From the NCBI RefSeq assembly GCF_032444005.1, contig NC_091289.1:92132001-92196000 (forward strand): a stretch of 64,000 bases of DNA, given 5' to 3'. Positions 1-63,542 of the stretch are shown here, in pieces. Positions within the stretch are counted from its first letter, which is position 1. Every line of letters starts with the position of its first letter. The notes under the pieces were generated by a model, which was not told the DNA's origin, ran no database searches, and saw nothing but the letters and a program-made list of their open reading frames with translations. Position numbers and translations under genes: made by a program. The stretch is from Ranitomeya imitator (taxonomy: Eukaryota).

Positions 1-1878
1 ACTGCACATGATGCTCCATACTGTATAATGGCCACACATGATGCTCTATACTGTATAATGGCTGCACATGATGCTCCATACTGTATAATGACCGCACATG
101 ATGCTCCATACTGTATAATGACCGCACATGATGCTTCATTCTGTATAAAGGCCACACAGTGCTCCATACTGTATAACGACCCCACATGATGCTCAATACT
201 GTATACTGGCCACACATGATGCTCCATACTGTATAATGGCCACACATGATGCTCTATACTGTATAATGACCGCATCTGATGCTCCATACTGTATAATAGC
301 CACAAATGATGCTCCATACAATACAATGACTGCACAAGATGCTCCATACTGTATAATGACTGCACATGATGCTCCATACTGTATAATAGCCACAAATGAT
401 GCTCCATGCTGTATAATGACCGCACATGATGCTCCATACTGTATAATGACTGCACATGATGCTCCATACTGTATGACTTTACATGATGCTCCATACTGTA
501 TAATGACCGCACATGATGCTCCATTTTGTATAACGACCCCACATGATGCTCAATACTGTATAATGACTGCACATGATGCTCCATTCTGTATAATAACCAC
601 ATATGATGCTCCATACTGTATAATGACCGCACATGATGCTCCATACTGTATAATGACCGCACATGATGCTCCATACTGTATAATGACTGCACATGATGCT
701 CCATACTGTATAATTGCCGCACATGATGCTCCATGCTGTATAATGGCCACACAGTGCTCCAGACTGTATAACGACCCCACATGATGCTCAATACTGTATA
801 ATGGCAACACATGATGCTCAATACTGTATAATGGCCCACATGATGCTCAATACTGTATAATGACCCCACATGATGCTCAATACTGTATAATAGCCGCACA
901 TGATACTCCATACTGTATAATTACCGCACATGATGCTCTATACTGTATAAGGGTCACACAGTGCTCCATACTGTATAACGACCCCACATGATGCTCAATA
1001 CTGTATAATGGCCACACATGATGCTCAATACTATATAATGACCACATATGATGCTCCATACTGTATAATAGCCACAAATGATGCTCCATACTGTATAATG
1101 ACTGCACATTATGCTCCATACTGTATAATGACTGCACATGATGCTCCATACTGTATAATAGCCACAAATGATGCTCCATACTGTATAATGACTGCACATG
1201 ATGCTCCATACTGTATGACTTTACATGATGCTCCATACTGTATAATGACCGCACATGATGCTCCATTTTGTATAACGACCCCACATGATGCTCAATACTG
1301 TATAATGACTGCACAATGCTCCATACTGTATAATGACCGCACATGATGCTCCATACTGTATAATGACCGCACATGATGCTCCATACTGTATAATGGCCAC
1401 ACATGATGCTCCATACTGTATAATGGCCGCACATGATGCTCCATACTGTATAATAGCCGCACATGATGCTCTATACTGTATAATGACCGCACATGATGCT
1501 CCATACTGTATAATGACCGCACATAATGCTCCATAATGTATAATGACTGCACATGATGCTCCATATTGTATAATGTCCACACATGATGCTCAATACTGTA
1601 TAATAGCCGCACATGATGCTCTATACTGTATAATGACCGCACATGATGCTCCATACTGTATAATGACCGCACATAATGCTCCATACTGTATAATGGCCGC
1701 ACATGATACTCAATACTGTATAATAGCCGCACATGATGCTCCATACTGTATAATAGCCGCACATGATGCTCCATACTGTATAATGACTGCACATGATGCT
1801 CCATACTGTATAATGACCGCACATGATGCTCCATACTGTATATTGGCCGCACATGATACTTCGTACCGTATAATGGCC
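1..1878. repeat. 30-bp minisatellite, consensus about CACATGATGCTCCATACTGTATAATGACCG; runs off the left edge of the window
   Basis: Unit is directly visible about 60 times; six-frame ORFs show 10-aa periodicity (MTAHDAPYCI). Confidence 0.97.
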
Positions 1879-4800
1879 ATACATAGCTACTCCTACACAC
1901 ACGGCTCCTCTCCGTACCCATGGCTCCACTCCATACATTTCATACACACAAGGCTCTGCTCCATACACCTCGTGCGCATTCAGCTCTTACAAATTCAGCT
2001 CCGCTCCATATATCTCGTACACACGGCACTACTCCGTACACCTCGTACATACACGCTGCTCCGCTCCGTATACCTTGCACACACATGGCTCCACTGCGTA
2101 CACCTCATACACAAACGGCTCCTCTCCATACATCTCGTACACACACGGCACTACTCCGTACACCTCATACACACACGGCTCTGCTCTATACACATTTTAC
2201 ACGCTGCTCCGCTCCGTATACCTTGTACATGCATGGCTCTGCTCTGCACACCTCGTACACACGTGGCTCTGCTCTGTACACACGTAGCTCCGCTCCGTAC
2301 ACCTCGTACACATGTGGCTCCGCTCCATACACCTTTCACACTCTGCTCTGATCCGCACACCTCTTACACACACAACTCCGCTGCATACACCTTTCACACG
2401 CTGCTCCACTCCGTACACCTCGTACACTCGCGGCTGTGCGCCGTACACGCAGTTCCGTACACCTCTTACACACGACTCCGCTCCGTACACCTTTCACATG
2501 CTGCTCCGCTCCGTACACCTCGTACACACGCGGCTGTGCTCCGTACACCTCGTACACACGCGGCTGTGCTCCATACACCTCTTACACACGGCTCCATACA
2601 CCTCTTACACACGACTCCGCTCCGTACACCTTTCACATGCTGCTCTGCTCCGTACACCTCGTACACATGCGGCTGTGCTCCGTACACCTCTTACACACAC
2701 GACTCCACTCCGTACACCTTTCACATGCCTCTCCGCTCCGTACACCTCATACACACGCGGCTGTGCTCCGTACACCTCTTACACACGACTCCGCTCTGTA
2801 CAACTTTCACGTGCTCCTCCGCTCCGTACACACGCGGCTGTGCTCCGTACACCTCTTACACACGACTCCGATCTGTACACCTTTCACATGCTGCTCCGCT
2901 CCATACACCTTGTACACATGCGGCTGTGCTCTGTACACCTCTTACACACACGACTCCACTCCGTACACCTTTGACATGCTGCTCCGCTCCGTACACCTCG
3001 TACACACGCGGCTGTGCTCCGTACACCTCTTACACACGACTCCGCTCTGTACAACTTTCACGTGCTCCTCCGCTCCGTACACACGCGGCTGTGCTCCGTA
3101 CACCTCGTACAGACGGCTCCATACACCTCTTACACACGGCTCCATACACCTCTTACACACGACTCCGCTCCGTACACCTTTCACATGCTGCTCTGCTCCG
3201 TACACCTCGTACACATGCGGCTGTGCTCCGTACACCTCTTACACACACGACTCCACTCCGTACACCTTTCACATGCCTCTCCGCTCCGTACACCTCATAC
3301 ACACGCGGCTGTGCTCCGTACACCTCTTACACACGACTCCGCTCTGTACAACTTTCACGTGCTCCTCCGCTCCGTACACACGCGGCTGTGCTCCGTACAC
3401 CTCTTACACACGACTCCGATCTGTACACCTTTCACATGCTGCTCCGCTCCATACACCTTGTACACATGCGGCTGTGCTCTGTACACCTCTTACACACACG
3501 ACTCCACTCCGTACACCTTTGACATGCTGCTCCGCTCCGTACACCTCGTACACACGCGGCTGTGCTCCGTACACCTCTTACACACGACTCCGCTCTGTAC
3601 AACTTTCACGTGCTCCTCCGCTCCGTACACACGCGGCTGTGCTCCGTACACCTCGTACAGACGGCTCCATACACCTCTTACACACTACTCCGCTCCGTAC
3701 ACCTTTCACATGCTGCTCCGCTCCGTACACCTCGTACACACGTGGCTGTGCTCCGTACACCTCTTACACACAACTCCGCTCCATACACCTTTCACATGCT
3801 GCTCCGCTCCGTACACCTCGTACACACGTGGCTGTGCTCCGTACACCTCTTATACACGACTCCGCTCCGTACACCTTTCACATGCTGCTCCGCTCTGTAC
3901 ACCTCGTACACATGCGGCTGTGCTCCGTACACCTCTTACACACACGACTCCACTCCGTACACCTTTCACATGCTGCTCCGCTCCGTACACCTCGTACACA
4001 CGCGGTTGTGCTCCGTACACCTCTTACACACGACTCCGCTCTGTACACCTTTCACGTGCTCCTCCGCTCCATACACCTCGTACACATGCGGCTGTGCTCC
4101 GTACACCTCGTACACACGGCTCCATACACCTCTTACACACTACTCCGCTCCATACACCTTTCACATGCTGCTCTGCTCCGTACACCTCGTACACACGTGG
4201 CTGTGCTCCGTACACCTCTTACACACGACTCCGCTCCGTACACCTTTCACATGCTGCTCCGCTCCGTACACCTCGTACACACGTGGCTGTGCTCCGTACA
4301 CCTCTTACACACGACTCCGATCTGTACACCTTTCACATGCTGCTCCGCTCCATACACCTCGTACACATGCGGCTGTGCTCTGTACACCTCTTACACACAC
4401 GACTCCACTCCGTACACCTTTGACATGCTGCTCCGCTCCGTACACCTCGTACACACGCGGCTGTGCTCCGTACACCTCGTACACATGGCTCCGTATACCT
4501 CTTACACACGACTCCACTCCATACACACGCGGCTGTGCTCCGTACACCTCGTACACACGGCTCCATACACCTCTTACACAGTACTCCGCTCCGTACACCT
4601 TTCACATGCTGCTCCGCTCCGTACACCTCGTACACACGTGGCTGTGCTCCGTACACCTCTTACACACGACTCCGCTCCGTACACCTTTCACATGCTGCTC
4701 CGCTCCGTACACCTCGTACACATGCGGCTGTGCTCCGTACACCTCTTACACACACGACTCCACTCCGTAAACCTTTCACATGCTGCTCCGCTCCGTACAC

Positions 4801-5940
4801 CTCGTACACACGCGGCTGTGCTCCGTACACCTCTTACACACGACTCCGCTCTGTACACCTTTCACGTGCTCCTCCGCTCCGTACACCTCGTACACACTCG
4901 GCTGTGCTCCGTACACCTCATACACACGGCTCCATACATCTCTTACACACTACTCTGCTCCGTACACCTTTCACATGCTGCTCCGCTCCGTACACCTCGT
5001 ACACACGTGGCTCTGCTCTGTACACCTCTTACACACGACTCCGCTCCGTACAGCTTTCACATGCTGCTCCGCTCCGTACACACGTGGCTGTGCTCCGTAC
5101 ACCTCGTACACATGGCTCCGTACACCTCTTACACACAACACTGCTCTGTACATCTTTCACATGCTGCTCCGCTCTGTACACCTCGTACACATGCGGCTGT
5201 GCTCCGTACACCTCGTACACACGGCTCCATACATCTCTTACACACTACTCCGCTCCATACACCTTTCACATGCTGCTCCGCTCCGTACACCTCGTACACA
5301 CGTGGCTGTGCTCCGTACACCTCTTACACACGACTCCGCTCCGTACAGCTTTCACATGCTGCTCCGCTCCGTACACCTCGTACACACGTGGCTGTGCTCC
5401 GTACACCTCTTACACACGACTCCGCTCTGTACACCTTTCACGTGCTCCTCCGCTCCGTACACCTCGTACACACGCGGCTGTGCTCCGTACACCTCGTACA
5501 CATGGCTCCGTACACCTCTTACACACGACTCCGCTCTGTACATTTTTCACATGCTGCTCCGCTCTGTACACCTCGTACACACGTGGCTGTGCTCCGTACA
5601 CCTCGTACACATGGCTCCGTACACCTCTTAAACACACGACTCCGCTCCGTACACCTTTCACATGCTGCTCCGCTCCGTACACCTCGTACACACGCGGCTG
5701 TGCTCCGTACACATGGCTCCGTATACCTCTTACACACGACTCCGCTCCGTACATCTTTCACATGCTGCTCTACTCCGTACACCTCGTACACACGCGGCTG
5801 CGCTCCGTACACCTCATGCACACGGCTCCGTACACCTCTTACACACACGACTCTGCTCCATACAACTTTCACACGCTGCTCCGATCCATACACCTCGTAC
5901 ACACACGGCTCTGCTACATCCACACTGTAAACACCTCCTG
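1879..5940. repeat. C/A-rich compound minisatellite built from three related 28-30 bp monomers, containing an internal 548-bp tandem duplication
   Basis: Monomers ACACCTCGTACACACGCGGCTGTGCTCCGT, ACACCTCTTACACACGACTCCGCTCCGT and ACACCTTTCACATGCTGCTCCGCTCCGT alternate; diagnostic variants recur at +548 bp (2864/3412; 3112/3660). Confidence 0.95.
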
Positions 5941-5958
5941 ACCTCACACATACACTGA

Positions 5959-6345
5959 GGGTATGTTTCCACGGTCAGGATGGCCGGCGGTATCGCCGGA
6001 GCGGCTTAGCCGCTCTGCGGTAGCCCCGCCCCCTTTCTGGGACGCGATGATGCCGGATGTGTTCACAGCATACATCCGGCATCATCGCTCCCCACCATAG
6101 GGCCCTGTGCTATATCTTGCGGCGACGCTGCGTCGCCGCAAGATATACGGACATGCTGCGATCTGAAAAGACGCGCAGCATGTCCGGAGTCGCAGGGCCG
6201 CCGCGTGCGTGTTACCACGCATAGTGGAGACGGGATTTCATTAAATCCCCTCCACTATGCTGTAACATCTGGACGCTGCGTGTCTGACGCTGCGGCTCTA
6301 TGCAGCGTCAGACACGCAGCGTTTCCTGATCGTGGAAACAGACCC
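5959..6345. mobile_element. Non-autonomous MITE, PIF/Harbinger-like
   Basis: TIRs GGGTATGTTTCCACGGTCAGGA / TCCTGATCGTGGAAACAGACCC; flanked by TGA/TTA (TWA-like); internal perfect 21-bp hairpin at 6273-6322. Confidence 0.75.
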
Positions 6346-12979: not shown

Positions 12980-13944
12980 AATTATGGAAACAGGAACACA
13001 TGGGCTACTTGCACAGTGAACAAGTCTGTATGATCATGTTCACAAACCACCAAGAAACCTGAAGACACAAAAGAGAATAGTAAAACCAAAAACACTCAGT
13101 TTGAAAAAATGTTGCAGTAATCCGCAAGTGCTAGTAAAAGATGTAAAAAACAGGGTATTTGGTTGATACGTTTTTTGCAAAAAATGTATACTAAGCTGCT
13201 CTACCAATCTTCACGGTATACCCTTATCAGAGCAGTCCTAACTAATGTATGCAATCCCTATCTGATGTATTTAAAAACCTGATCATCTGTATATAACCTG
13301 TGTGAACAGGGTTCAGAGAGGAAAAATCCATGTGTGCATACAGGGTAGAACAGCTTTTGTGCAGATAGCCCAAGAGGAGTGGTGGAACTCCCCAGTCTTG
13401 TAGACACAAGAGAACAATTATGGAAACAGGAACACATGGGCTACTTGCACAGTGAACAAGTCTGTATGATCATGTTCACACACCACCAAGAAACCTGAAG
13501 ACACAAAAGAGAATAGTAAAACCAAAAACACTCAGTTTGAAAAAATGTTGCATGTGCAAGTAGCCCATGTGTTCCTGTTTCCATAATTGTTCTCTTGTGT
13601 CTACAATACTGGGGAGTTCCACCACTCCTCTTGGGCTATCTGCACAAAAGCTGTTCTACCCTGTATGCACACATGGATTTTTCCTCTCTGAACCCTGTTC
13701 ACACAGGTTATATACAGATGATCAGGTTTTTAAATACATCAGATAGGGATTGCATACATTAGTTAGGACTGCTCTGATAAGGGTATACCGTGAAGATTGG
13801 TAGAGCAGCTTAGTATACATTTTTTGCAAAAAACGTATCAACCAAATACCCTGTTTTTTACATCTTTTACTAGCACTTGCGGATTACTGCAACATTTTTT
13901 CAAACTGAGTGTTTTTGGTTTTACTATTCTCTTTTGTGTCTTTA
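12980..13944. repeat. Insertion made of a 436-bp unit in partial tandem followed by its inverted copy (390-bp arms), flanked by a 15-bp direct repeat; probably derived from a Penelope pLTR
   Basis: Unit starts at 12980 and 13416; arms 13062-13451 and 13553-13942 are reverse complements (one mismatch seen); TAGCTGCTACATCAA at 12967-12981 and 13943-13957. Confidence 0.85.
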
Positions 13945-14285
13945 GCTGCTACATCAAACAAATCGCTTTTTTCAGGGCTAATTCAAATAGATTCTTTTCT
14001 GTCATAATAATACCCCTCTGGTCTGCAATTCGTGTAGGGTAAGATGTGGCAGTAGCGTATCACAGGCATCTAGTCAGGGATTATTGTCTCATAAATTGTA
14101 AGCCTTGCTGCGGTTTTTCTCCCATGCACTTAATGACTAATTCATGTTTTTTAGTTATCTGTACTCCGTAAAGCTGGTAGTAACATAGTAACATAGTTAG
14201 TAAGGCCGAAAAAAGACATTTGTCCATCCAGTTCAGCCTATATTCCATCATAATAAATCCCCAGATCTACGTCCTTCTACAGAAC

Positions 14286-17066
14286 CTAATAATTGTATGA
14301 TACAATATTGTTCTGCTCCAGGAAGACATCCAGGCCTCTCTTGAACCCCTCGACTGAGTTCGCCATCACCACCTCCTCAGGCAAGCAATTCCAGATTCTC
14401 ACTGCCCTAACAGTAAAGAATCCTCTTCTATGTTGGTGGAAAAACCTTCTCTCCTCCAGACGCAAAGAATGCCCCCTTGTGCCCGTCACCTTCCTTGGTA
14501 TAAACAGATCCTCAGCGAGATATTTGTATTGTCCCCTTATATACTTATACATGGTTATTAGATCGCCCCTCAGTCGTCTTTTTTCTAGACTAAATAATCC
14601 TAATTTCGCTAATCTATCTGGGTATTGTAGTTCTCCCATCCCCTTTATTAATTTTGTTGCCCTCCTTTGTACTCTCTCTAGTTCCATTATATCCTTCCTG
14701 AGCACCGGTGCCCAAAACTGGACACAGTACTCCATGTGCGGTCTAACTAGGGATTTGTACAGAGGCAGTATAATGCTCTCATCATGTGTATCCAGACCTC
14801 TTTTAATGCACCCCATGATCCTGTTTGCCTTGGCAGCTGCTGCCTGGCACTGGCTGCTCCAGGTAAGTTTATCATTAACTAGGATCCCCAAGTCCTTCTC
14901 CCTGTCAGATTTACCCAGTGGTTTCCCGTTCAGTGTGTAATGGTGATATTGATTCCCTCTTCCCATGTGTATAACCTTACATTTATCATTGTTAAACCTC
15001 ATCTGCCACCTTTCAGCCCAAGTTTCCAACTTATCCAGATCCATCTGTAGCAGAATACTATCTTCTCTTGTATTAACTGCTTTACATAGTTTTGTATCAT
15101 CTGCAAATATCGATATTTTACTGTGTAAACCTTCTACCAGATCATTAATGAATATGTTGAAGAGAACAGGTCCCAATACTGACCCCTGCGGTACCCCACT
15201 GGTCACAGCGACCCAGTTAGAGACTATACCATTTATAACCACCCTCTGCTTTCTATCACTAAGCCAGTTACTAACCCATTTACACACATTTTCCCCCAGA
15301 CCAAGCATTCTCATTTTGTGTACCAACCTCTTGTGCGGCACGGTATCAAACGCTTTGGAAAAATCGAGATATACCACGTCCAATGACTCACCGTGGTCCA
15401 GTCTATAGCTTACCTCTTCATAAAAACTGATTAGATTGGTTTGACAGGAGCGATTTCTCATAAACCCATGCTGATATGGAGTTAAACAGTTATTCTCATT
15501 GAGATAATCCAGAATAACATCCCTCAGAAACCCTTCAAATATTTTACCAACAATAGAGGTTAGACTTACTGGCCTATAATTTCCAGGTTCACTTTTAGAG
15601 CCCTTTTTGAATATTGGCACCACATTTGCTATGCGCCAGTCCTGCGGAACAGACCCTGTCGCTATAGAGTCCCTAAAAATAAGAAATAATGGTTTATCTA
15701 TTACATTACTTAGTTCTCTTAGTACTCGTGGGTGTATGCCATCCGGACCCGGAGATTTATCTATTTTAATCTTATTTAGCCGGTTTCGCACCTCTTCTTG
15801 GGTTAGATTGGTGACTCTTAATATAGGGTTTTCATTGTTTCTTGGGATTTCACCTAGCATTTCATTTTCCACCGTGAATACCGTGGAGAAGAAGGTGTTT
15901 AATATGTTAGCTTTTTCCTCGTCATCTACAACCATTCTTTCCTCACTATTTTTTAAGGGGCCTACATTTTCAGTTTTTATTCTTTTACTATTGATATAGT
16001 TGAAGAACAGTTTGGGATTAGTTTTACTCTCCTTAGCAATGTGCTTCTCTGTTTCCTTTTTGGCAGCTTTAATTAGTTTTTTAGATAAAGTATTTTTCTC
16101 CCTATAGTTTTTTAGAGCTTCAATGGTGCCATCCTGCTTTAGTAGTGCAAATGCTTTCTTTTTACTGTTAATTGCCTGTCTTACTTCTTTGTTTAGCCAC
16201 ATTGGGTTTTTCCTATTTCTAGTCCTTTTATTCCCACAAGGTATAAACCGCTTACACTGCCTATTTAGGATGTTCTTAAACATTTCCCATTTATTATCTG
16301 TATTCTCATTTCTGAGGATATTGTCCCAGTCTACCAGATTAAGGGCATCTCTAAGCTGTTCAAACTTTGCCTTCCTAAAGTTCAATGTTTTTGTGACTCC
16401 CTGACAAGTCCCCCTAGTGAAAGACAGGTGAAACTGCACAATATTGTGGTCGCTATTTCCTAAATGCCCAACCACCTGCAGATTTGTTATTCTGTCAGGT
16501 CTATTAGATAGTATTAGGTCTAAAAGTGCTGCTCCTCTGGTTGGATTCTGCACCAATTGTGAAAGATAATTTTTCTTGGTTATTAGCAGAAACCTGTTGC
16601 CTTTATGGGTTTCACAGGTTTCTGTTTCCCAGTTAATATCCGGGTAGTTAAAGTCCCCCATAACCAGGACCTCATTATGGGTTGCAGCTTCATCTATCTG
16701 CTTTAGAAGTAGACTTTCCATGCTTTCTGTTATATTTGGGGGTTTGTAACAGACCCCAATGAGAATTTTGTTACCATTTTTCCCTCCATGAATTTCAACC
16801 CATATGGACTCGACATCCTCATTCCCTTCGCTAATATCCTCCCTTAAAGTGGACTTTAGACAAGACTTTACATAGAGACAAACCCCTCCTCCTCTCCGAT
16901 TTTTACGATCCTTTCTAAACAGACTGTAACCCTGTAAGTTAACTGCCCAGTCATAGCTTTCATCTAACCATGTCTCGGTTATTCCCACTATGTCAAAGTT
17001 ACCTGTAGATATTTCTGCTTCTAGTTCTTCCATCTTGTTTGTAAGGCTTCTGGCGTTTGCGAGCAT
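14286..17066 (-). CDS. CR1 ORF2: AP endonuclease plus reverse transcriptase, 926 aa, uninterrupted
   Basis: NARSL..K, GITETWL, GDFN, SDHN (APE motifs); YLDFSKAFD, GVPQGSVLGP, FADDTKL (RT motifs); the frame is open upstream to 17300, overlapping the end of ORF1. Confidence 0.97.
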   Translation of the reverse strand: MLANARSLTNKMEELEAEISTGNFDIVGITETWLDESYDWAVNLQGYSLFRKDRKNRRGGGVCLYVKSCLKSTLREDISEGNEDVESIWVEIHGGKNGNKILIGVCYKPPNITESMESLLLKQIDEAATHNEVLVMGDFNYPDINWETETCETHKGNRFLLITKKNYLSQLVQNPTRGAALLDLILSNRPDRITNLQVVGHLGNSDHNIVQFHLSFTRGTCQGVTKTLNFRKAKFEQLRDALNLVDWDNILRNENTDNKWEMFKNILNRQCKRFIPCGNKRTRNRKNPMWLNKEVRQAINSKKKAFALLKQDGTIEALKNYREKNTLSKKLIKAAKKETEKHIAKESKTNPKLFFNYINSKRIKTENVGPLKNSEERMVVDDEEKANILNTFFSTVFTVENEMLGEIPRNNENPILRVTNLTQEEVRNRLNKIKIDKSPGPDGIHPRVLRELSNVIDKPLFLIFRDSIATGSVPQDWRIANVVPIFKKGSKSEPGNYRPVSLTSIVGKIFEGFLRDVILDYLNENNCLTPYQHGFMRNRSCQTNLISFYEEVSYRLDHGESLDVVYLDFSKAFDTVPHKRLVHKMRMLGLGENVCKWVSNWLSDRKQRVVINGIVSNWVAVTSGVPQGSVLGPVLFNIFINDLVEGLHSKISIFADDTKLCKAVNTREDSILLQMDLDKLETWAERWQMRFNNDKCKVIHMGRGNQYHHYTLNGKPLGKSDREKDLGILVNDKLTWSSQCQAAAAKANRIMGCIKRGLDTHDESIILPLYKSLVRPHMEYCVQFWAPVLRKDIMELERVQRRATKLIKGMGELQYPDRLAKLGLFSLEKRRLRGDLITMYKYIRGQYKYLAEDLFIPRKVTGTRGHSLRLEERRFFHQHRRGFFTVRAVRIWNCLPEEVVMANSVEGFKRGLDVFLEQNNIVSYNY

Positions 17067-17203
17067 GCAGTTTAGAGGATTTTGTTTTGTTCCAATCTCC
17101 TCACTGTGGATTGTTTTAGAAATGTTCTTACCTCCCTTCTGAGTATGTTTTCCTGGGTCGTCTTTGTTCGAGTCTAATGTTTTTCTTCCCGTCCCCTCTT
17201 CTT

Positions 17204-18157
17204 CTAGTTTAACGCCCTCCTGATGAGTGTAGCGAGTCTTCTGGCGAATGTGTGTTTCCCAGGTTTGTTGAGGTGTAGTCCGTCTCTGGCGAGGAGTCCA
17301 TCATACCAGTAATTCACACCGTGGTCCAGGAATCCAAATCCTTGTTGTCTGCACCATCGTCTTAGCCAGTTGTTTGCATCAAGGATCCTGTTCCATCTCC
17401 TGGTGCCATGCCCATCTACTGGAAGGATAGAAGAAAAAACTACCTGTGCATCCAGTTCCTTTACTTTCTTCCCCAACTCTTCAAAGTCCTTGCAGATTGT
17501 CGGTAGGTCCTTCCTTGCCGTGTCATTGGTGCCAACATGTATCAGAAGAAATGGGTGGACGTCCTTGGAGCTGAAGAGCTTTGGTATCCTATCGGTCACA
17601 TCCTTGATCATCGCACCTGGAAGGCAGCATACTTCTCTTGCAGTTATGTCCGGTCTGCAGATGGCTGCTTCTGTGCCTCTCAGTAGTGAGTCTCCCACCA
17701 CCACCACTCTTCGTTGCTTCTTGGCTGTACTTTTTGCTGTCACTTGTTGCTGTGTGCCCTTTTCTTTTTTGCTTGCTGGTATTGCTTCATTCTTAGGTGT
17801 GCCATCTTCATCCTCTACAAAGATTTGATATCGGTTCTTCAGTTGTGTGGTTGGTGATTTCTCCATGGTCTTCTTGCTTCTTTTGGTCACATGCTTCCAC
17901 TCATCTGCTTTTGGAGGTTCTCTGACACTTTTTGCACCTTCTGTGACCAGTAGAGATGCTTCTGTTCTGTCTAGAAAGTCTTCATTCTCTTTGATGAGTT
18001 TCAAAGTTGCTATTCTTTCTTCCAGACCCCGCACCTTTTCTTCTAAAAGGGCCACTAGTCTACACTTCTGACAGGTGAAATTGGATTCTTCTTCTGGTCG
18101 ATCTGTGAACATGTAGCACATGCTGCAGCTCACCATGTAGGTTGTCACATCTGCCAT
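17204..18157 (-). CDS. CR1 ORF1: N-terminal Cys zinc finger and coiled coil plus SGNH/GDSL esterase domain, 317 aa
   Basis: CSMC...CQKC followed by LLEEKVRGLEERIATL; VVVVGDSLLRG (catalytic Ser), CLPGA, HVGTND, DGLHL (Asp/His); esterase ORF1 is established for vertebrate CR1. Confidence 0.94.
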   Translation of the reverse strand: MADVTTYMVSCSMCYMFTDRPEEESNFTCQKCRLVALLEEKVRGLEERIATLKLIKENEDFLDRTEASLLVTEGAKSVREPPKADEWKHVTKRSKKTMEKSPTTQLKNRYQIFVEDEDGTPKNEAIPASKKEKGTQQQVTAKSTAKKQRRVVVVGDSLLRGTEAAICRPDITAREVCCLPGAMIKDVTDRIPKLFSSKDVHPFLLIHVGTNDTARKDLPTICKDFEELGKKVKELDAQVVFSSILPVDGHGTRRWNRILDANNWLRRWCRQQGFGFLDHGVNYWYDGLLARDGLHLNKPGKHTFARRLATLIRRALN

Positions 18158-18264
18158 GTTGCTCCTAGATCCTGCTGACTTGCTGTGTGTTTTCCTTCTT
18201 GTGTAATCTACTCAGCCAAGCTCTCTTGCAATAATGTCCTACAGGCAAAAATTACGGCGCGCGG

Positions 18265-20713
18265 TTTGGTGATGCTTTCGAAGCAGCTGGTCCCGGCTGT
18301 ACCCAACGATCTTCTAGCTTAGGGAGACTTCGCTTCTCCCAGAAGGCACCTGGAATATGCAAATTAGCCTCCTGAAGCTTGAATCCCTGGTTTGGTGATG
18401 CTTTCGAAGCAGCTGTTCCCGGCTGTACCCAACGATCTTCTAGCTTAGGGAGACTTCGCTTCTCCCAGAAGGCACCTGGAATATGCAAATTAGCCTCCTG
18501 AAGCTTGAATCCCTGGTTTGGTGATGCTTTCGAAGCAGCTGGTCCCGGCTGTACCCAACGATCTTCTAGCTTAGGGAGACTTCGCTTCTCCCAGAAGGCA
18601 CCTGGAATATGCAAATTAGCCTCCTGAAGCTTGAATCCCTGGTTTGGTGATGCTTTCGAAGCAGCTGGTCCCGGCTGTACCCAACGATCTTCTAGCTTAG
18701 GGAGACTTCGCTTCTCCCAGAAGGCACCTGGAATATGCAAATTAGCCTCCTGAAGCTTGAATCCCTGGTTTGGTGATGCTTTCGAAGCAGCTGGTCCCGG
18801 CTGTACCCAACGATCTTCTAGCTTAGGGAGACTTCGCTTCTCCCAGAAGGCACCTGGAATATGCAAATTAGCCTCCTGAAGCTTGAATCCCTGGTTTGGT
18901 GATGCTTTCGAAGCAGCTGGTCCCGGCTGTACCCAACGATCTTCTAGCTTAGGGAGACTTCGCTTCTCCCAGAAGGCACCTGGAATATGCAAATTAGCCT
19001 CCTGAAGCTTGAATCCCTGGTTTGGTGATGCTTTCGAAGCAGCTGGTCCCGGCTGTACCCAACGATCTTCTAGCTTAGGGAGACTTCGCTTCTCCCAGAA
19101 GGCACCTGGAATATGCAAATTAGCCTCCTGAAGCTTGAATCCCTGGTTTGGTGATGCTTTCGAAGCAGCTGGTCCCGGCTGTACCCAACGATCTTCTAGC
19201 TTAGGGAGACTTCGCTTCTCCCAGAAGGCACCTGGAATATGCAAATTAGCCTCCTGAAGCTTGAATCCCTGGTTTGGTGATGCTTTCGAAGCAGCTGGTC
19301 CCGGCTGTACCCAACGATCTTCTAGCTTAGGGAGACTTCGCTTCTCCCAGAAGGCACCTGGAATATGCAAATTAGCCTCCTGAAGCTTGAATCCCTGGTT
19401 TGGTGATGCTTTCGAAGCAGCTGGTCCCGGCTGTACCCAACGATCTTCTAGCTTAGGGAGACTTCTCCCAGAAGGCACCTGGAATATGCAAATTAGCCTC
19501 CTGAAGCTTGAATCCCTGGTTTGGTGATGCTTTCGAAGCAGCTGGTCCCGGCTGTACCCAACGATCTTCTAGCTTAGGGAGACTTCGCTTCTCCCAGAAG
19601 GCACCTGGAATATGCAAATTAGCCTCCTGAAGCTTGAATCCCTGGTTTGGTGATGCTTTCGAAGCAGCTGGTCCCGGCTGTACCCAACGATCTTCTAGCT
19701 TAGGGAGACTTCGCTTCTCCCAGAAGGCACCTGGAATATGCAAATTAGCCTCCTGAAGCTTGAATCCCTGGTTTGGTGATGCTTTCGAAGCAGCTGGTCC
19801 CGGCTGTACCCAACGATCTTCTAGCTTAGGGAGACTTCGCTTCTCCCAGAAGGCACCTGGAATATGCAAATTAGCCTCCTGAAGCTTGAATCCCTGGTTT
19901 GGTGATGCTTTCGAAGCAGCTGGTCCCGGCTGTACCCAACGATCTTCTAGCTTAGGGAGACTTCGCTTCTCCCAGAAGGCACCTGGAATATGCAAATTAG
20001 CCTCCTGAAGCTTGAATCCCTGGTTTGGTGATGCTTTCGAAGCAGCTGGTCCCGGCTGTACCCAACGATCTTCTAGCTTAGGGAGACTTCGCTTCTCCCA
20101 GAAGGCACCTGGAATATGCAAATTAGCCTCCTGAAGCTTGAATCCCTGGTTTGGTGATGCTTTCGAAGCAGCTGGTCCCGGCTGTACCCAACGATCTTCT
20201 AGCTTAGGGAGACTTCGCTTCTCCCAGAAGGCACCTGGAATATGCAAATTAGCCTCCTGAAGCTTGAATCCCTGGTTTGGTGATGCTTTCGAAGCAGCTG
20301 GTCCCGGCTGTACCCAACGATCTTCTAGCTTAGGGAGACTTCGCTTCTCCCAGAAGGCACCTGGAATATGCAAATTAGCCTCCTGAAGCTTGAATCCCTG
20401 GTTTGGTGATGCTTTCGAAGCAGCTGGTCCCGGCTGTACCCAACGATCTTCTAGCTTAGGGAGACTTCGCTTCTCCCAGAAGGCACCTGGAATATGCAAA
20501 TTAGCCTCCTGAAGCTTGAATCCCTGGTTTGGTGATGCTTTCGAAGCAGCTGGTCCCGGCTGTACCCAACGATCTTCTAGCTTAGGGAGACTTCGCTTCT
20601 CCCAGAAGGCACCTGGAATATGCAAATTAGCCTCCTGAAGCTTGAATCCCTGGTTTGGTGATGCTTTCGAAGCAGCTGGTCCCGGCTGTACCCAACGATC
20701 TTCTAGCTTAGGG
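18265..20713 (-). repeat. Tandem array of about 19.5 copies of a 126-bp monomer forming the CR1 5' UTR
   Basis: TTTGGTGATG recurs every 126 bp from 18265 to 20654; I saw only one 5-bp deletion (~19465) and one substitution (~18416). Confidence 0.97.
18357..18364 (+). promoter_or_regulatory. Octamer motif ATGCAAAT (POU-family consensus); first of 19 copies, one per monomer
   Basis: Each monomer reads CACCTGGAATATGCAAATTAGCC; the motif match is direct, function is not shown. Confidence 0.45.
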
Positions 20714-21129
20714 AGTGTTAGCTTAGTGTTACTTGTTACTCTACAGATTCTTACTGCCATGTACAACAATAAAATGAAATTGAGGGCCGATTCAAATCCC
20801 TTCAATATTCTACAGTAATACCACTCTGATCTGCAATTTGTCAATGGTGAGCTGTGGCAGTTGGAATGGCATATGCGAGGCATCTAGTCAAGGATTATTG
20901 TCTTATAATTTGTAAGCCTTGCTACTTGTTTGTTCCATGCACTCATTGACCGATTCATGTTTTTTTTGCGGTGTTCCGTACTCAGAAATTCATCAAAGCA
21001 TGGAAAATTAAGTGATTTAATATGTCCTTTACAGTTTCTCTGTAGCATCTGTATGTAAGAGATAGTGGTGGGAGACTTTATGCTATGTCAGCTGGAATTA
21101 CCACTTCTGAATTCTCTGGTGCTTTGTTT

Positions 21130-21810
21130 CCATCTATTTCTGAGTGGTTATTGAAGTATGTTTGGGGTCAATGTTCTGCTGGAAGACCTACTACGATGCA
21201 AACCCAGCTTTCTGACTACATTGCGACCCAAAATCCTTTGGGAATCTTCACATTTCAAGGCACCCAGGGCCAGAGGCAGCAAAACAACATATCTTTGAAC
21301 CTCCATCATATTTGACTAACTAATGTGTTTTTTATTTGTAGGCCTCATTCCATTTACACTATTCAGTAGAATTATATGCTTTACCAAAAAACTCTATCTT
21401 TGTCTCATCTGTCTACAAGATACCTGCTTGCCATCTAACAATTGAAAGGGCTGCCTGATGGCCTTCTACAAATAGTGATGGCTGGCTGATAGGCCTGGAA
21501 AAATTAAATGACTTTCAATGTGTCTGATCATGTCTCACTTACCACATGACCAGATAAGATATTACAATTATAAAATTACATTTCCTGTGGAATGTTTTTT
21601 TTCACCATTGAAAGCTATGTAAACATGCAGCAAAAACACTGCGTGTGAACATAGCCCAGCCCTAGGTGTGATGGAGCATTTTTTTTTCCTCTTATTAATT
21701 TTGCCTTATATACAAGTTCTTATCATGGAAATAATGTTTCTTAACCTTTTTTCCAGTCAAATCCATTTTAAGTGTGGTTTTGTATGTTTTAATGTCCGTC
21801 CGTAAAAGGG
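21130..21810 (-). mobile_element. Highly decayed Tc1-like fragment
   Basis: TTGAAGTATGTTTGGGGTCAATGTTCTGCTGGAAGACC and downstream text resemble the antisense strand of a Tc1 transposase; no intact ORF. Confidence 0.45.
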
Positions 21811-22953
21811 GAGCAATACTCTGACAACATTGTTTTTAGCACCAACTTGAGATTTAGAGATGCTTCCGGGGGTCTTCCTCATGCTGTTCCCATGCCATTT
21901 CAGCACTGTTTGCATAGTTTATCAATTTTTTTACACCCCCTACAGACCTTCAGAGGTCTGCCACCAGAAAAATGCTCAGGTTTCCCATTGACTTCCATTA
22001 TACTCGTTATTTGAGTCAAGCACCTGAGCATTACGATTTGCACGACTCAAGTAACGACTACCCAAGCATTTTAGTTATTGCTGGTGGACAACTCCTTTAA
22101 GTGTGGGTTGAACCATGAGCTCCTGTGACAAGAACAGGGAAGTAAGACTGTGACCTGTATGAGCTCCAAGTGTTATATACTGAAAGGTGTAATCATCAAG
22201 AACTGCACTAACGCTGTTGTGCAACTAAAGTGCTGTGCAAATTAATTGGGAAAAAGCAAAAAAATTAAATGTTATAATGCACTGTTACATACTAATTCTG
22301 AAAATTATCTTTTTCCACTGGCTAGTTGACCAAGATTTATTATATATTAAAACCGGTTTGAATCACTGACTGGAAACCAACTTACGATTTTACTTAAAAA
22401 ATGCTTTGTCCCAATTAATTTGCACAGCACTGTATTACGTTTGTGCCCTTGTCAAAAGACTTTAACCACTTGTTTCCCTTCCTCACTTTGAGTAAATTTA
22501 TATTCAACTCAACCCTGCTATGTTTGTATCCATCTCACAGTGATTGACTGCAGTGGTAACTTTGAGCACATCATCTGATGGAGTGGTTTCCTAGTTAACT
22601 GACTGCTGCAGCCATTCACATGGTCCTCTGACATCTGAATAGAGCATACAATGCAGAATCCACTCCAGACCCGAATGGGCACTGGAAGCTGAGTATGCCA
22701 CAGGTTATCATAATAGCATACATGGCTGAAATGCATTTATTTTTTTTGCTATACCGAACAAACTTTTTTTATCCTTCAATCTCACTTCAGCTGTTCCTGG
22801 TACCACTATGTTTTCTTCAGAATTCTTCGCAATTTACTTGCCTTTATTAAACTTCTCCGCCTGTAACTGCTTTTGTGTGGAATTCTCTCCTTCATAAAAT
22901 GTAATTGTAAATGTCTTACATATTAAACCGACATTTAATTTCATTTTCCACAG

Positions 22954-23154
22954 GTAAATATTGATCACAAAACAAGAGAGCTTATCTCCCAGAAAATCTC
23001 ACAACCAACAGTTAATTGTTTTGATGATGCTCAACAACTTATCATATGTCTTATGGCAAAGGACTCATTTCCTCGCTTCTTACGATCAGAGCATTATAAA
23101 GAGTTGGTGAAGAAGCAACAAAATAATGGACAAAAAAGATGGCTGTCCTTTTAA
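22954..23154 (+). CDS. rgs21: Terminal coding exon of regulator of G-protein signalling 21 (second half of the RGS domain plus C-terminus)
   Basis: Acceptor TTTCATTTTCCACAG then phase-0 VNIDHKTRELISQKISQPTVNCFDDAQQLIICLMAKDSFPRFLRSEHYKELVKKQQNNGQKRWLSF*; matches the human RGS21 C-terminus from memory (INIDFGTRDLISKNIAEPTLKCFDEAQKLIYCLMAKDSFPRFLKSEIY...KKWLPFL); absent from the ORF track. Confidence 0.85.
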   Translation, partial: VNIDHKTRELISQKISQPTVNCFDDAQQLIICLMAKDSFPRFLRSEHYKELVKKQQNNGQKRWLSF

Positions 23155-34504: not shown

Positions 34505-37500
34505 CCCCTTCATGACCCAGCCTATTTTGCCCTTAAAGACCTTGCCGTTTTTTGCAATTCTGACCAGTGTCCCTTTATGAGGTAATAACTCAGGAACGCT
34601 TCAATGGATCCTAGCGGTTCTGAGATTGTTTTTTCGTGACATATTGGGCTTCATGTTAGTGGTAAATATAGGTCAATAAATTCTGTGTTTATTTGTGATA
34701 AAAACGGAAATTTGGCGAAAATTTCGCAATTTTCACATTTTGAATTTTTATTCTGTTAAACCAGAGAGTTATGTGACACAAAATAGTTAATAAATAACAT
34801 TTCCCACATGTATACTTTACATCAGCACAATTTTGGAAACATTTTTTTTTTGCTAGGAAGTTATAAGGGTTAAAATTTGACCAGCGATTTCTCATTTTTA
34901 CAACGAAATTTACAAAACCATTTTTTTTAGGGACCACCTCACATTTGAAGTCAGATTGAGGGGTCTATATGGCTGAAAATACCCAAAAGTGACACCATTC
35001 TAAAAAATGCACCCCTCAAGGTGCACAAAACCACATTCAAGAAGTTTATTAACCCTTCAGGTGCTTCACAGCAGCAGAAGCAACATGGAAGGAAAAAATG
35101 AACATTTAACTTTTTAGTCACAAAAATGATCTTTCAGCAACAATTTTTTTATTTGCCCAATGGTAAAAGGAGAAACTGAACCACGAAAGTTGTTGTCCAA
35201 TTTGTCCTGAGTACACTGATACTTCATATGTGGGGTTAAACCACTGTTTGGGCGCACGGCAGGGCTTGGAAGGGAAGGAGCGCCATTTGACTTTTTGAAT
35301 GAAAAATTGGCTGCACTCTTTAGCAGACACTGTCACATTTGGAGAGCCCCCGTGTGCCTAAAAATTGGAGCTCCCCCACAAGTGACCCCATTTTGGAAAC
35401 TGGACCCCCCCAAGGAACTTATCTAGATGCCTAGTGAGCACTTTAAACCCTCAGGTGCTTCACAAATTGATCCGTAAAAATGAAAAAGTACTTTTTTTTC
35501 ACAAAAAAATTCTTTTCGCCTCAATTTTTTCATTTTCACATGGGCAATAGGATAAAATGGATCCTAAAATTTGTTGGGCAATTTCTCCCGAGTACGCCGA
35601 TACCTCATATGTGGGGGTAAACCACTGTTTGGGCACACGGCAGGGCTCGGAAGGGAAGGCGCGCCATTTGACTTTTTGAATGGAAAATTAGCTCCAATTG
35701 TTAGCGGACACCATGTCGCGTTTGGAGAGCCCCTGTGTGCCTATGCATTGGAGCTCCCCCACAAGTGACCCCATTTTGGAAACTAGACCCCCCAAGGAAC
35801 TTATCTAGATGCATACTGAGCACTTTAAACCCCCAGGTGCTTCACAGAAGTTTATAACGCAGAGCCATGAAAATAAAAAATAATTTTTCTTTCCTCAAAA
35901 ATGATTTTTTAGCCTGGAATTTCCTATTTTGCCAACGGTAATAGGAGAAATTGGACAATAAATGTTGTTGTCCAGTTTGTCTTGAGTACGCAGATACCCC
36001 ATATGTGGGGGTAAACCACTGTTTGGGCGCACGGCAGGGCTCGGAAGGGAAGGCACGCCATTTTGGCTTTTTAAATGGAAAATTAGCTCCAATCATTAGC
36101 GGACACCATGTCGCGTTTGGAGAGCCCCTGTGTGCCTAAACATTGGAGATCCTCCAAAAATGACCCCATTTTGGAAACTAGACCCCCAAAGGAACTAATC
36201 TAGATTTGTGGTGAGCACTTTGAACCCTCAAGTGCTTCACAGAAGTTTATAACAGAACAGTGAAAATAATAAATACGTTTTCTTTCCTCAAAAATAATTT
36301 TTTAGCCCAGAATTTTTTAATTTTCCCAATGGTAACAGGAGAAATTTGACCCCAATATTTGTTGTCCAGTTTCTCCTGAGTACGCTGATACCCCATGTGT
36401 GGGGGTAAACCACTGTTTGGGCACACGTCGGTGCTCAGAAGGGAAGTAGTGACTTTTGAAATGCAGACTTTGATGGAATGGTCTGCGGGCGTCACGTTGA
36501 ATTTGCAGAGCCCCTGGTGTGCCTAAACAGTAGAAACCCCCCACAAGTGACCCCATTTTGGAAACTAGACCCCCCAAGGAACTTATCTAGATATGTGGTG
36601 AGCACTTTGAACCCCCAAGTGCTTCACAGACATTTACAACGCAGAGCCGTGAAAATAAAAAATCATTTTTCTTTCCTCAAAAATGATGTTTTAGCAAGCA
36701 TTTTTTTATTTTCTCAAGGGTAACAGGAGAAATTGAACCCCAGTAATTGTTGCGCAGTTTGTCCTGACCATGCTGGTACCCCATATGTGGGGGTAAACCA
36801 CTGTTTGGGCACACGTCGGGGCTCGGAAGGGAGGGAGCACCATTTGACTTTTTGAATAAAAGATTGGCTGGAATCAATGGTGGAACCATGTTGCGTTTGG
36901 AGACCCCCTGATGTGCCTAAACAGTGGAAACCCCTCAATTCTAACGCCAACACACCCCTAACCCTTATCCCAACTGTAGCCGTAACCCTAACCACAACCC
37001 TAACCCCAACACACCCCTAACCCTAACCACAACCCTAATTCCAACCCAACCCTAAGGCTATGTGCCCACGTTGCGGATTCGTGTGAGATTTTTCCGCACT
37101 ATTTTTGAAAAATCCGCGGGTAAAAGGCACTACGTTTTACCTGCGTATTTACCGCGGATTTCCAGTGTTTTTTGTGCGGATTTCACCTGCGGATTCCTAT
37201 TGAGGATCAGGTGTAAAACGCTGCGGAATCCGCACAAAGAATTGACATGCTGCGGAAAATACAATGCAGCGTTTCCGCGTGGTATTTTCCGCACCATGGG
37301 CACAGCGGATTTGGTTTTCCATATGTTTACATGGTACTGTAAACCTGATGGAACACTGCTGTGGATCCGCAGCGGCCATAAGTGTTTCCAGCCATGGCCG
37401 ATGATATTGCAGCATCGGCCATGGCTGGATTGTAATATTTCACCAGTTTTTTAGGTGAAATATTACAAATCGCTGATTGGCAGTTTCACTTTCAACAGCC

Positions 37501-62316: not shown

Positions 62317-63542
62317 TGGACCACGGTGAGTCATTGGACGTGGTATATCTCGATTTTTCCAAAGCGTTTGATACCGTGCCGCACAAGAGGTTGGTACACA
62401 AAATGAGAATGCTTGGTCTGGGGGAAAATGTGTGTAAATGGGTTAGTAACTGGCTTAGTGATAGAAAGCAGAGGGTGGTTATAAATGGTATAGTCTCTAA
62501 CTGGGTCGCTGTGACCAGTGGGGTACCGCAGGGGTCAGTATTGGGACCTGTTCTCTTCAACATATTCATTAATGATCTGGTAGAAGGTTTACACAGTAAA
62601 ATATCGATATTTGCAGATGATACAAAACTATGTAAAGCAGTTAATACAAGAGAAGATAGTATTCTGCTACAGATGGATCTGGATAAGTTGGAAACTTGGG
62701 CTGAAAGGTGGCAGATGAGGTTTAACAATGATAAATGTAAGGTTATACACATGGGAAGAGGGAATCAATATCACCATTACACACTGAACGGGAAACCACT
62801 GGGTAAATCTGACAGGGAGAAGGACTTGGGGATCCTAGTTAATGATAAACTTACCTGGAGCAGCCAGTGCCAGGCAGCAGCTGCCAAGGCAAACAGGATC
62901 ATGGGGTGCATTAAAAGAGGTCTGGATACACATGATGAGAGCATTATACTGCCTCTGTACAAATCCCTAGTTAGACCGCACATGGAGTACTGTGTCCAGT
63001 TTTGGGCACCGGTGCTCAGGAAGGATATAATGGAACTAGAGAGAGTACAAAGGAGGGCAACAAAATTAATAAAGGGGATGGGAGAACTACAATACCCAGA
63101 TAGATTAGCGAAATTAGGATTATTTAGTCTAGAAAAAAGACGACTGAGGGGCGATCTAATAACCATGTATAAGTATATAAGGGGACAATACAAATATCTC
63201 GCTGAGGATCTGTTTATACCAAGGAAGGTGACGGGCACAAGGGAGCATTCTTTGCGTCTGGAGGAGAGAAGGTTTTTCCACCAACATAGAAGAGGATTCT
63301 TTACTGTTAGGGCAGTGAGAATCTGGAATTGCTTGCCTGAGGAGGTGGTGATGGCGAACTCAGTCGAGGGGTTCAAGAGAGGCCTGGATGTCTTCCTGGA
63401 GCAGAACAATATTGTATCATACAATTATTAGGTTCTGTAGAAGGACGTAGATCTGGGTATTTATTATGATGGAATATAGGCTGAACTGGATGGACAAATG
63501 TCTTTTTTCGGCCTTACTAACTATGTTACTATGTTACTATGT
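62317..63542 (+). mobile_element. 5'-truncated CR1 copy, nearly identical to the full-length element at 14178-20713
   Basis: Protein from DHGESLDVVYLDF to NNIVSYNY is identical except GTRGH to GTREH; same 3' UTR and (CTATGTTA)n tail; ATGTCCCA at 62296-62303 and 63539-63546. Confidence 0.96.

What the first reader, a model, noticed from the sequence alone, without database searches (positions are those of the whole stretch)
18265..20713. Intact CR1 LINE whose 5' end is a ~19.5 x 126-bp monomer array, each monomer with a POU octamer
Seen: the region upstream of ORF1 is a 2.45-kb, almost invariant tandem array. Each unit contains ATGCAAAT next to the E-boxes CACCTG and CAGCTG, giving 19 octamers. 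Established: mouse L1 uses tandem 5' monomers as an additive promoter, and ATGCAAAT is the POU/Oct consensus site. I do not know such a monomer promoter as a standard CR1 feature. Inference: this CR1 family may carry a copy-number-tunable, POU-responsive promoter active in germline or early embryo (frog Pou5f3). It could also act as an enhancer about 2.2 kb from the last rgs21 exon.
Basis: partly seen in the sequence, partly recalled or inferred. Interest (0 to 1): 0.8.

Follow-up and report, generated by a model that had tools for sequence, protein, structure and literature searches.

The report
Frog CR1 with tandem-monomer 5' end
A young, intact CR1 jumping gene in a poison-frog genome starts with 19.5 near-identical 126-base units plus a short unique linker, a layout known from mouse L1; other copies, a second assembly and other species share it, but promoter activity and any POU/octamer control are untested.

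Summary
TRF finds a 126-bp array at 18263-20715, 19.5 copies, 99% matches. It is 19 full units plus a 64-nt cut unit, with two private variants. Each full unit carries ATGCAAAT, CACCTG and CAGCTG.

The LINE lies on the minus strand, so in its sense the octamer reads ATTTGCAT. Order: cut unit, 19 units, 105-nt linker ("tether"), ORF1 (zinc-finger-like motif plus SGNH esterase), ORF2 (endonuclease plus reverse transcriptase), 3' tail of ACTATGTT repeats.

The array belongs to the family, not only this locus:
- In DNA contigs of two other organisms, one contig runs ORF1-tether-monomer. The monomer is a closed 156-nt (126+30) contig at 4.6x and 5.5x the tether's depth.
- Six Ranitomeya imitator gene models translate 1 to 6 monomers. 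Two end in the tether, and they show a second monomer subtype.

The sense strand of monomer plus tether has no ATG (P about 0.015), as expected for an mRNA leader.

This is mouse-L1-like architecture in a CR1, which I found in no paper. Promoter activity, POU dependence and an effect on the RGS gene 2.2 kb away are untested; the octamer is one motif per unit.

This scan noted the same family before on other DNA of this genome, with about 3 to 88 units (unchecked).

The parts
20652..20715 (-). Outermost (sense 5'-most) monomer, cut to 64 nt. The element begins here.
   Evidence: In-register walk of the array. Sequence beyond 20715 no longer matches the unit.
18263..20651 (-). 19 full 126-bp monomers. 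Each has ATTTGCAT, CAGGTG and CAGCTG on the sense strand. No ATG on the sense strand.
   Evidence: TRF; the repeat finder family D3; motif and ATG counts.
18158..18262 (-). 105-nt unique linker (tether) between the last monomer and the ORF1 ATG. It has no ATG, and the ORF1 start has A at -3 and G at +4.
   Evidence: No similarity to the monomer or to anything else in the window. The same junction is seen in contigs of organisms B and C, with a 10-nt indel variant. The tether is read through at the end of P0121 and P0122.
17204..18157 (-). ORF1, 317 aa: N-terminal CxxC...CxxC zinc-finger-like motif plus SGNH/GDSL esterase domain.
   Evidence: the ORF listing; Pfam PF13472, 3.4e-09; homologues at 91-99% local identity (55-97% of the query) in Ranitomeya imitator and about 45-50% in turtles and squamates.
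17067..17203 (-). Spacer between ORF1 and ORF2.
   Evidence: ORF coordinates.
14286..17066 (-). ORF2, 926 aa: apurinic-type endonuclease plus reverse transcriptase.
   Evidence: Pfam PF03372 5e-16, PF14529 8.6e-13, PF00078 4.1e-34.
14178..14285 (-). 3' UTR ending in (ACTATGTT)2-ACTA, with no poly(A).
   Evidence: Sequence. The end is defined by the 100% identical second copy (I1). One more 8-nt unit is present in organism B (table 4).
62317..63539 (+). Second copy of the same CR1 family: 5'-truncated, 1223 nt of the 3' end, 100% identical.
   Evidence: the repeat finder inverted pair I1; junctions printed.
22939..23154 (+). Context only: last coding exon of an RGS-domain gene, 2.2 kb from the array and on the opposite strand to the CR1.
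   Evidence: Translation; Pfam RGS 2.3e-13, profile positions 65-117 of 117.

Best explanation
The 2.45-kb array is the monomeric 5' UTR of a young, recently active CR1 LINE family of Ranitomeya poison frogs. The element reads, on the minus strand: cut monomer, 19 x 126-bp monomers, 105-nt tether, ORF1, ORF2, octamer-repeat 3' tail.

Shown: this monomer-tether-ORF1 layout recurs at other loci, in a second assembly and in other species. The number of units varies. At least two monomer subtypes exist. The whole leader lacks ATG on the sense strand.

Inferred by analogy with mouse and rat L1: each monomer carries an internal, TATA-less Pol II promoter. Candidate sites are ATTTGCAT, CAGGTG and CAGCTG. 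Transcripts could then start inside the array and carry promoter copies to the new insertion. Several units would protect the promoter against the heavy 5' truncation typical of CR1. Because there is no upstream AUG, a transcript starting in any unit would reach the ORF1 AUG.

The near-identity of the 19.5 units, against roughly 5 per element by read depth, suggests recent expansion by unequal exchange, replication slippage or template jumping, either here or in the source copy.
For: Anatomy.

Recent activity: intact ORFs, and a second copy 100% identical over 1223 nt.

Family-level architecture:
- In organism C (X12), a 1459-nt contig of depth 86.1 runs from ORF2 through ORF1 and the tether to 30 nt inside the monomer. 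The monomer is a separate 156-nt (126+30) contig of depth 397.7, a ratio of 4.6.
- In organism B (X2), a 3073-nt contig of depth 19.9 and a 156-nt monomer contig of depth 110.2 give a ratio of 5.5.
- Depth falls from the 3' end to ORF1 (1504 to 86 in X12), as expected for 5'-truncated LINE copies, then rises again in the monomer.

Independent loci: P0121 has 6 units of a second subtype and ends in the tether. P0122 has 5 units and reads the tether up to the stop 9 nt before the ORF1 ATG. P0123 has about 3 units, P0124 about 2, and P0125 and P0126 one each.

Leader property: no ATG on the sense strand of monomer plus tether, P about 0.0145 in 20,000 shuffles, while the antisense strand has 2 ATG per unit. 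There is also no AATAAA or ATTAAA in the unit.

Precedent: mouse and rat L1 have monomers plus a tether (PMC5381506). Young mouse L1s carry 3-4 monomers on average and monomer 2 enhances promoter activity (PMC9022269). Monomer duplication maintains promoters during truncation-prone retrotransposition (PMC6454616). A chicken CR1-H 5' UTR acts as a transcription start in oocytes (bioRxiv 10.64898/2026.03.19.712899).
Against: No transcription start site or promoter activity has been shown. The RNA-library contigs (X4) have no direction and may come from DNA or read-through. The main X4 contig leaves the monomer after 23 nt into unrelated sequence.

The monomer is not a CpG island (GC 52%, CpG o/e 0.47) and has no TATA, CCAAT or GC box. 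The two Inr-like matches are what chance gives.

Depth ratios count all monomers in a genome, so a few very long arrays, or arrays detached from CR1, could inflate them. The array length at this locus was not checked against raw long reads. DNA of other full-length copies could not be fetched.
Confidence: 0.62

Rival explanations
1. Passenger minisatellite. The 126-bp repeat was picked up at the 5' end of a master copy, by 5' transduction or local duplication, and now travels with the family and expands locally like a young satellite. It has no promoter role; the real promoter lies in the tether or at the start of ORF1.
For: Arrays far longer than a promoter needs: 19.5 units here, against about 5 per tether by depth. 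Earlier unchecked notes of this scan report up to about 41 and 88 units. The near-identity of units points to local expansion after or apart from retrotransposition. The unit has no CpG island or TATA box.
Against: The junction with the tether is at one fixed phase in three organisms. The architecture persists through at least two monomer subtypes. The sense strand is free of ATG and poly(A) signals, which is not expected of a neutral passenger. CR1 copies are so often 5'-truncated (6% reach ORF1 in X12) that a useless 5' extension should be lost quickly.
Confidence: 0.2
2. The octamer would act as a distal element binding Oct-1, and a PSE-like box (TCACC... at the unit boundary) would recruit SNAPc, so that each unit starts transcription in the next.
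For: The octamer is the classical DSE motif of snRNA genes (PMC9652321). The sense unit contains TCACCA at positions 117-122, which matches the start of the human H1 PSE quoted in PMC1790723. The element here begins at unit position 63, about 70 nt downstream of that box in the preceding unit.
Against: Beyond TCACCA only about 10 of 16 positions match the human H1 PSE, and no frog PSE was available for comparison. The octamer-to-box distance is 85 nt (or 211 nt), not the usual 150-170 nt. snRNA-type Pol II promoters are tied to short, 3'-box-processed RNAs, not to a transcript of more than 4 kb. No Rfam family matches the region.
Confidence: 0.08
3. POU-specific, copy-number-tunable germline or embryonic promoter that also acts as an enhancer for the neighbouring RGS gene.
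For: There is one perfect octamer per unit. The peptide ANLHI that spans it is unchanged in all 16 ANLHI-bearing units of the six gene models, including the second subtype. The RGS exon lies 2.2 kb away.
Against: One 8-mer in a 126-nt unit is expected to match some known site. The two subtypes differ at only 2 fixed positions, so octamer conservation carries no statistical weight. There are no expression, binding or chromatin data. The CR1 is antisense to the RGS gene and near its 3' end.
Confidence: 0.1

Closest known systems
Mouse and rat L1 (L1Md A, Tf, Gf; L1Rn) monomeric 5' UTR
   Same: Tandem monomers at the 5' end, a unique tether before ORF1, a cut outermost monomer, a number of units that varies between copies, more than one monomer subtype, and a similar mean number of units (3-4 in young mouse L1, PMC9022269; about 5 here by depth).
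   Different: A different LINE clade: CR1, with an esterase ORF1 and an octamer-repeat 3' end without poly(A). There is no sequence similarity. The unit is 126 bp against about 200 bp (mouse) or 650 bp (rat). The tether is 105 nt against about 250 nt. There is no CpG island (o/e 0.47). Arrays are much longer at some loci. Promoter activity is unproven here.
CR1 LINEs of birds, turtles, crocodilians and Xenopus (chicken CR1-B, -F, -H)
   Same: [quoted passage not shown]
   Different: Described CR1 5' UTRs are unique sequences that differ between subfamilies and are poorly known (PMC4316615). Chicken CR1-H has a CpG-island 5' end. None of the papers I found describes tandem monomers.
Satellites born from transposable elements (for example chicken HinfI and Cen repeats from CR1)
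   Same: A piece of a LINE amplified in tandem to kilobases (PMC6947457 and PMC9659126).
   Different: Those arrays derive from ORF2 or the 3' UTR and are detached from a working element. Here the array sits at the 5' end of intact, mobile copies and is carried along by retrotransposition.

Membership tests
CR1-clade LINE | ORF2 with an apurinic-type endonuclease followed by a reverse transcriptase | tested here: met
   Pfam Exo_endo_phos 5e-16 and RVT_1 4.1e-34 in the 926-aa ORF.
CR1-clade LINE | ORF1 with a zinc-finger (PHD-like) motif and an SGNH esterase domain | tested here: met
   Lipase_GDSL_2 3.4e-09. The CxxC...CxxC motif at residues 10-33 was read from the translation and has no Pfam hit. 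Homologues are SGNH-esterase ORF1s of turtles, squamates and birds.
CR1-clade LINE | 3' end is an 8-nt microsatellite without poly(A) | tested here: met
   (ACTATGTT)2-ACTA at 14178-14197. One extra 8-nt unit is present in organism B.
CR1-clade LINE | Conserved hairpin in the 3' UTR | tested here: inconclusive
   Fold of the last 111 nt gives -24 kcal/mol, z = -1.2 against shuffles.
CR1-clade LINE | RT groups with CR1 in a phylogeny of LINE clades | not tested
   No tree was built. Placement rests on domain layout, the 3' end and the taxa of the ORF1 homologues.
L1Md-type monomeric LINE promoter (architecture) | Tandem monomers at the 5' end, a unique tether, then ORF1 | tested here: met
L1Md-type monomeric LINE promoter (architecture) | Present in many copies, with a variable number of monomers | tested here: met
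   Depth ratios of 4.6 and 5.5 in two other organisms. 1 to 6 units in six gene models of another assembly. 19.5 units here.
L1Md-type monomeric LINE promoter (architecture) | Each monomer has sense promoter activity and transcription starts inside the monomers | not testable with these tools
Only undirected RNA-library contigs were available.
L1Md-type monomeric LINE promoter (architecture) | Monomers form a CpG island | tested here: not met
   GC 52%, CpG o/e 0.47, 4 CpG per unit.
L1 clade | L1-type ORF1 (coiled coil, RRM) and a poly(A) tail | tested here: not met
   ORF1 is an esterase type and the 3' end is an octamer repeat. It works like L1Md at the 5' end but is not an L1.
snRNA-type (PSE/DSE) promoter | PSE matching the consensus at a fixed distance from the start, with an octamer DSE about 150-170 nt upstream | tested here: inconclusive
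   The octamer is present. Only the TCACCA core and about 10 of 16 positions match the human H1 PSE. Spacing is 85 or 211 nt. No frog PSE was available.

The most novel reading that the evidence does not exclude
A CR1 family has independently evolved a self-renewing, copy-number-variable monomer promoter. Its units also behave as a nascent satellite. Retrotransposition seeds short arrays across the genome, and these then expand locally to kilobases, forming dense clusters of octamer and E-box sites that act as germline or embryonic promoters and enhancers for host genes such as the adjacent RGS gene.
Probability: 0.12. Interest if true: 0.8.

Novelty: new variant of a known kind. Interest (0 to 1): 0.5.

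Why it matters
Monomer-plus-tether 5' ends are the textbook feature of mouse and rat L1. They are thought to solve a LINE's basic problem: keeping an internal promoter despite 5' truncation. Finding the same layout in an unrelated clade (CR1), in a frog whose genome is about 77% transposable elements (PMC12822217), would be a clear case of convergence.

It would also give the first well-defined 5' UTR of an active amphibian CR1. CR1 5' ends are otherwise hard to define because nearly all copies are truncated (PMC4316615). The perfect arrays also offer a natural series of 1 to many units for testing how promoter strength, methylation and silencing scale with monomer number.

A practical point: public R. 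imitator gene models translate these monomers as protein (P0121-P0126). These are annotation artefacts.

Tried and rejected
1. Fetching other genomic copies failed. The exact ORF1 is not on record. Loci encoding P0001, P0002, P0121 and P0122 are listed without DNA because the assembly files are too large. A scan of metagenome contigs for a 27-nt tether word found nothing.
2. The window has no further monomer or tether copy outside the array.
3. An Rfam scan of 13900-21200 at E up to 1 found nothing, so the unit is not a known RNA gene or derived from a tRNA or snRNA.
4. Reading the array as coding sequence was rejected. The sense frame is open (408- and 476-aa ORFs), but it has no Met, and the Pfam hits are zero-domain noise on a repeat. 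One open frame among six in a 126-nt unit is likely by chance.
5. Core-promoter motifs gave nothing useful: no TATA, CCAAT or GC box, and two YYANWYY matches are the chance expectation.
6. No convincing target-site duplication was found. The flanks share only AGCT-type microhomology.
7. The two flanks share a 190-bp direct repeat at 76% identity. This is too diverged to stem from this young insertion, so I read it as an older repeat into which the CR1 landed.
8. A regex search for upstream RGS exons in the window found none. It is therefore not shown that the CR1 lies in an intron.
9. Literature searches for CR1 or other non-L1 LINEs with 5' monomers returned only mouse and rat L1 work.

Full report
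**Observation**

Tandem Repeats Finder reports one array at 18263-20715: period 126, 19.5 copies, 99% matches, no indels in the consensus, score 4864. Walking it in register gives 19 full units and a 64-nt partial unit at 20652-20715. Only two departures from the consensus unit exist: a G>T in unit 2 and a 5-bp deletion in unit 10. ATGCAAAT occurs 19 times, all in the array and nowhere else on that strand of the window. CACCTG occurs 19 times and CAGCTG 20 times in the array. The finding's coordinates and counts are correct.

**The element**

The LINE lies on the minus strand.
- ORF1 is 18157..17204, 317 aa. It has a CxxC...CxxC zinc-finger-like start and a GDSL/SGNH esterase domain (PF13472, 3.4e-09).
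- After a 137-nt spacer comes ORF2, 17066..14286, 926 aa, with endonuclease (PF03372, 5e-16) and reverse transcriptase (PF00078, 4e-34).
- The 3' UTR ends at 14178 in (ACTATGTT)2-ACTA without poly(A).

This is the CR1 layout described in PMC4316615. A second copy, 5'-truncated, at 62317-63539 (+) is 100% identical over 1223 nt. Together with the open frames, this shows very recent activity.

Between the ORF1 ATG and the array lie 105 unique bases, the tether, which resemble neither the monomer nor anything else in the window. In the LINE's sense the order is: cut monomer, 19 monomers, tether, ORF1. The octamer then reads ATTTGCAT.

The best ORF1 homologues are from Ranitomeya imitator, at 91-99% local identity. 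Next come Dendrobates at 64% and turtles and squamates at about 45-50%.

**Is the array part of the family or a local accident?**

Three lines of evidence bear on this.

(a) I laid contigs of four public runs on 14178-18420.
- In organism C (X12), a 1459-nt contig of depth 86.1 runs from ORF2 through ORF1 and the tether to exactly 30 nt inside the monomer. The monomer itself is a separate 156-nt contig of depth 397.7. Since 156 = 126 + 30, this is what a closed cycle of a 31-mer graph looks like, so monomer-to-monomer junctions exist there. The ratio is 4.6 monomers per tether.
- In organism B (X2), the same pattern gives 110.2 over 19.9, a ratio of 5.5.
- In X12, depth falls from 1504 at the 3' end to 86 in ORF1, the usual 5'-truncation gradient. 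It then rises again in the monomer.
- The pooled DNA of organism A, and an RNA-library run, give ratios of about 3 to 4. Those depths are sums over many variant contigs.

(b) A protein search with the sense-frame translation of the array found six gene models of R. imitator (named by NCBI). The two I looked up, P0121 and P0122, lie on different contigs of assembly GCA_958301615.1.
- P0121 holds 6 units of a second subtype (E for Q, W for S) and ends in the tether.
- P0122 holds 5 units and reads the tether down to the stop 9 nt before the ORF1 ATG.
- P0123 holds about 3 units, P0124 about 2, and P0125 and P0126 one each.
- These are lower bounds, because a gene model takes only part of an array.

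(c) Earlier notes of this same scan describe the same architecture at about nine other loci of this genome, on other DNA. Their array spans correspond to about 3 to 88 units. I could not check those notes.

Together, (a) and (b) show that monomer-tether-ORF1 is the family's 5' end, that the number of units varies, and that at least two monomer subtypes exist. With 19.5 units this copy is well above the mean. Part of its length may therefore come from a recent expansion here or in its source copy.

**How it most likely works**

The layout matches the bipartite 5' UTR of mouse and rat L1, which has monomers carrying transcription signals and then a tether (PMC5381506). In that system, young elements carry 3-4 monomers and the second monomer enhances promoter activity (PMC9022269). 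Duplication of monomers is thought to keep the promoter alive during truncation-prone retrotransposition (PMC6454616).

I infer the same logic here. Each unit would be an internal, TATA-less Pol II promoter, and several units would insure against 5' truncation, which is severe in this family.

One new piece of sequence evidence fits a leader role. The sense strand of monomer plus tether contains no ATG at all, while the antisense strand has two per unit. In 20,000 shuffles this happens with P about 0.0145. The unit has no AATAAA or ATTAAA. The ORF1 ATG has A at -3 and G at +4. A transcript starting in any unit would therefore be translated from the ORF1 AUG.

A CR1 5' UTR can act as a promoter: in chicken oocytes, transcription starts at the demethylated 5' end of a full-length CR1-H.

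**What is not shown**

- No start site, no strand-specific RNA and no binding data exist. The RNA-library contigs have no direction and may be DNA or read-through. The main one leaves the monomer after 23 nt into unrelated sequence.
- The unit is not a CpG island (GC 52%, o/e 0.47) and lacks TATA, CCAAT and GC boxes. Its two Inr-like matches are what chance gives.
- The POU reading rests on one 8-mer per unit. Nineteen copies of one occurrence are not nineteen observations.
- The peptide across the octamer (ANLHI) is unchanged in all 16 units that carry it in the six gene models. But the subtypes differ at only two fixed positions, so this has no statistical weight.
Only TCACCA and about 10 of 16 positions match a human PSE, the spacing is off, and such promoters make short RNAs.
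- The RGS exon 2.2 kb away is real. An enhancer effect on it is pure conjecture. Upstream RGS exons were not found in the window.

**Comparison and novelty**

Functionally and architecturally this is like L1Md. By membership it is a CR1, not an L1: the ORF1 type and the 3' end do not fit L1. Papers on CR1 stress that 5' UTRs are poorly defined because nearly all copies are truncated (PMC4316615). Neither they nor searches for monomeric 5' ends in non-L1 LINEs turned up a CR1 with monomers. Reviews of satellites derived from transposable elements list CR1-derived satellites from ORF2 or the 3' UTR, not from a working 5' end. I therefore class it as a new variant of a known kind. An absence from the held library is not proof that it is undescribed, for instance in Repbase entries.

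**Limits**

Reads were laid on the ORF-tether-monomer stretch. The array length at this locus and its outer junction were therefore not checked against raw reads. No DNA of other full-length copies could be fetched.

Noticed in passing
window 13971-14152 and 20780-20965: The two flanks of the CR1 insertion share a direct repeat of about 190 bp at 76% identity. It is too diverged to stem from the young insertion. It is probably an older dispersed or tandem repeat into which the CR1 landed.
   Followed up: partly
window 13059-13458 and 13546-13945: A 400-nt inverted repeat, 99% complementary, with 87 nt between the arms, lies just beyond the CR1 3' end (I2). The scan also noted it as s1-307461.
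   Followed up: no
window 20716-20745: The first 30 nt beyond the outer end of the array read TGTTAGCTTAGTGTTACTTGTTACT on the + strand. This resembles a CR1 3' tail (TGTTACT repeats) in the opposite orientation, and it shares CTAAGCTA with the start of the cut monomer. It could be a tiny older CR1 fragment or microhomology at the 5' junction.
   Followed up: no
window 1-6000: A large C-rich array with a roughly 30-bp period (units such as ACACGCTGCTCCGCTCCGTACACCTCGT), GC up to 56% and GC skew about -0.45.
   Followed up: no
window 48885-49574 and 41268-41581: A tandem array with a 57-60-bp period (about 10 units). Inverted matches of 85-98% lie about 7.3 kb away (D17, D19, I4-I6, I8, I10).
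   Followed up: no
window 35109-36887: A tandem array with a period of about 390 bp, 5 units, 65-90% identity (D18, D20).
   Followed up: no
window 18254-18255 (tether): Contigs of organism C and of an RNA-library run of organism A carry 10 extra bases here (G, then GCGCCGTAA), so the tether has an indel polymorphism between subfamilies. About 41% of monomer depth in organism A has T instead of C at unit position 74 (18336).
   Followed up: partly
P0121-P0126 and P0002-P0010 (R. imitator gene models): Public gene models fuse CR1 ORF1 pieces, or translated 5' monomers, to host exons (PI3K-like, GPCR, bHLH, amine oxidase and others). These are likely annotation artefacts, or in some cases chimeric transcripts.
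   Followed up: partly
run X4 contig on window 17738-18285: An 853-nt contig of an RNA-library run joins ORF1, the tether and 23 nt of monomer to 295 nt of unrelated sequence (TCTAAGTTTTCC...). It may be a truncated copy inside a host transcript.
   Followed up: no
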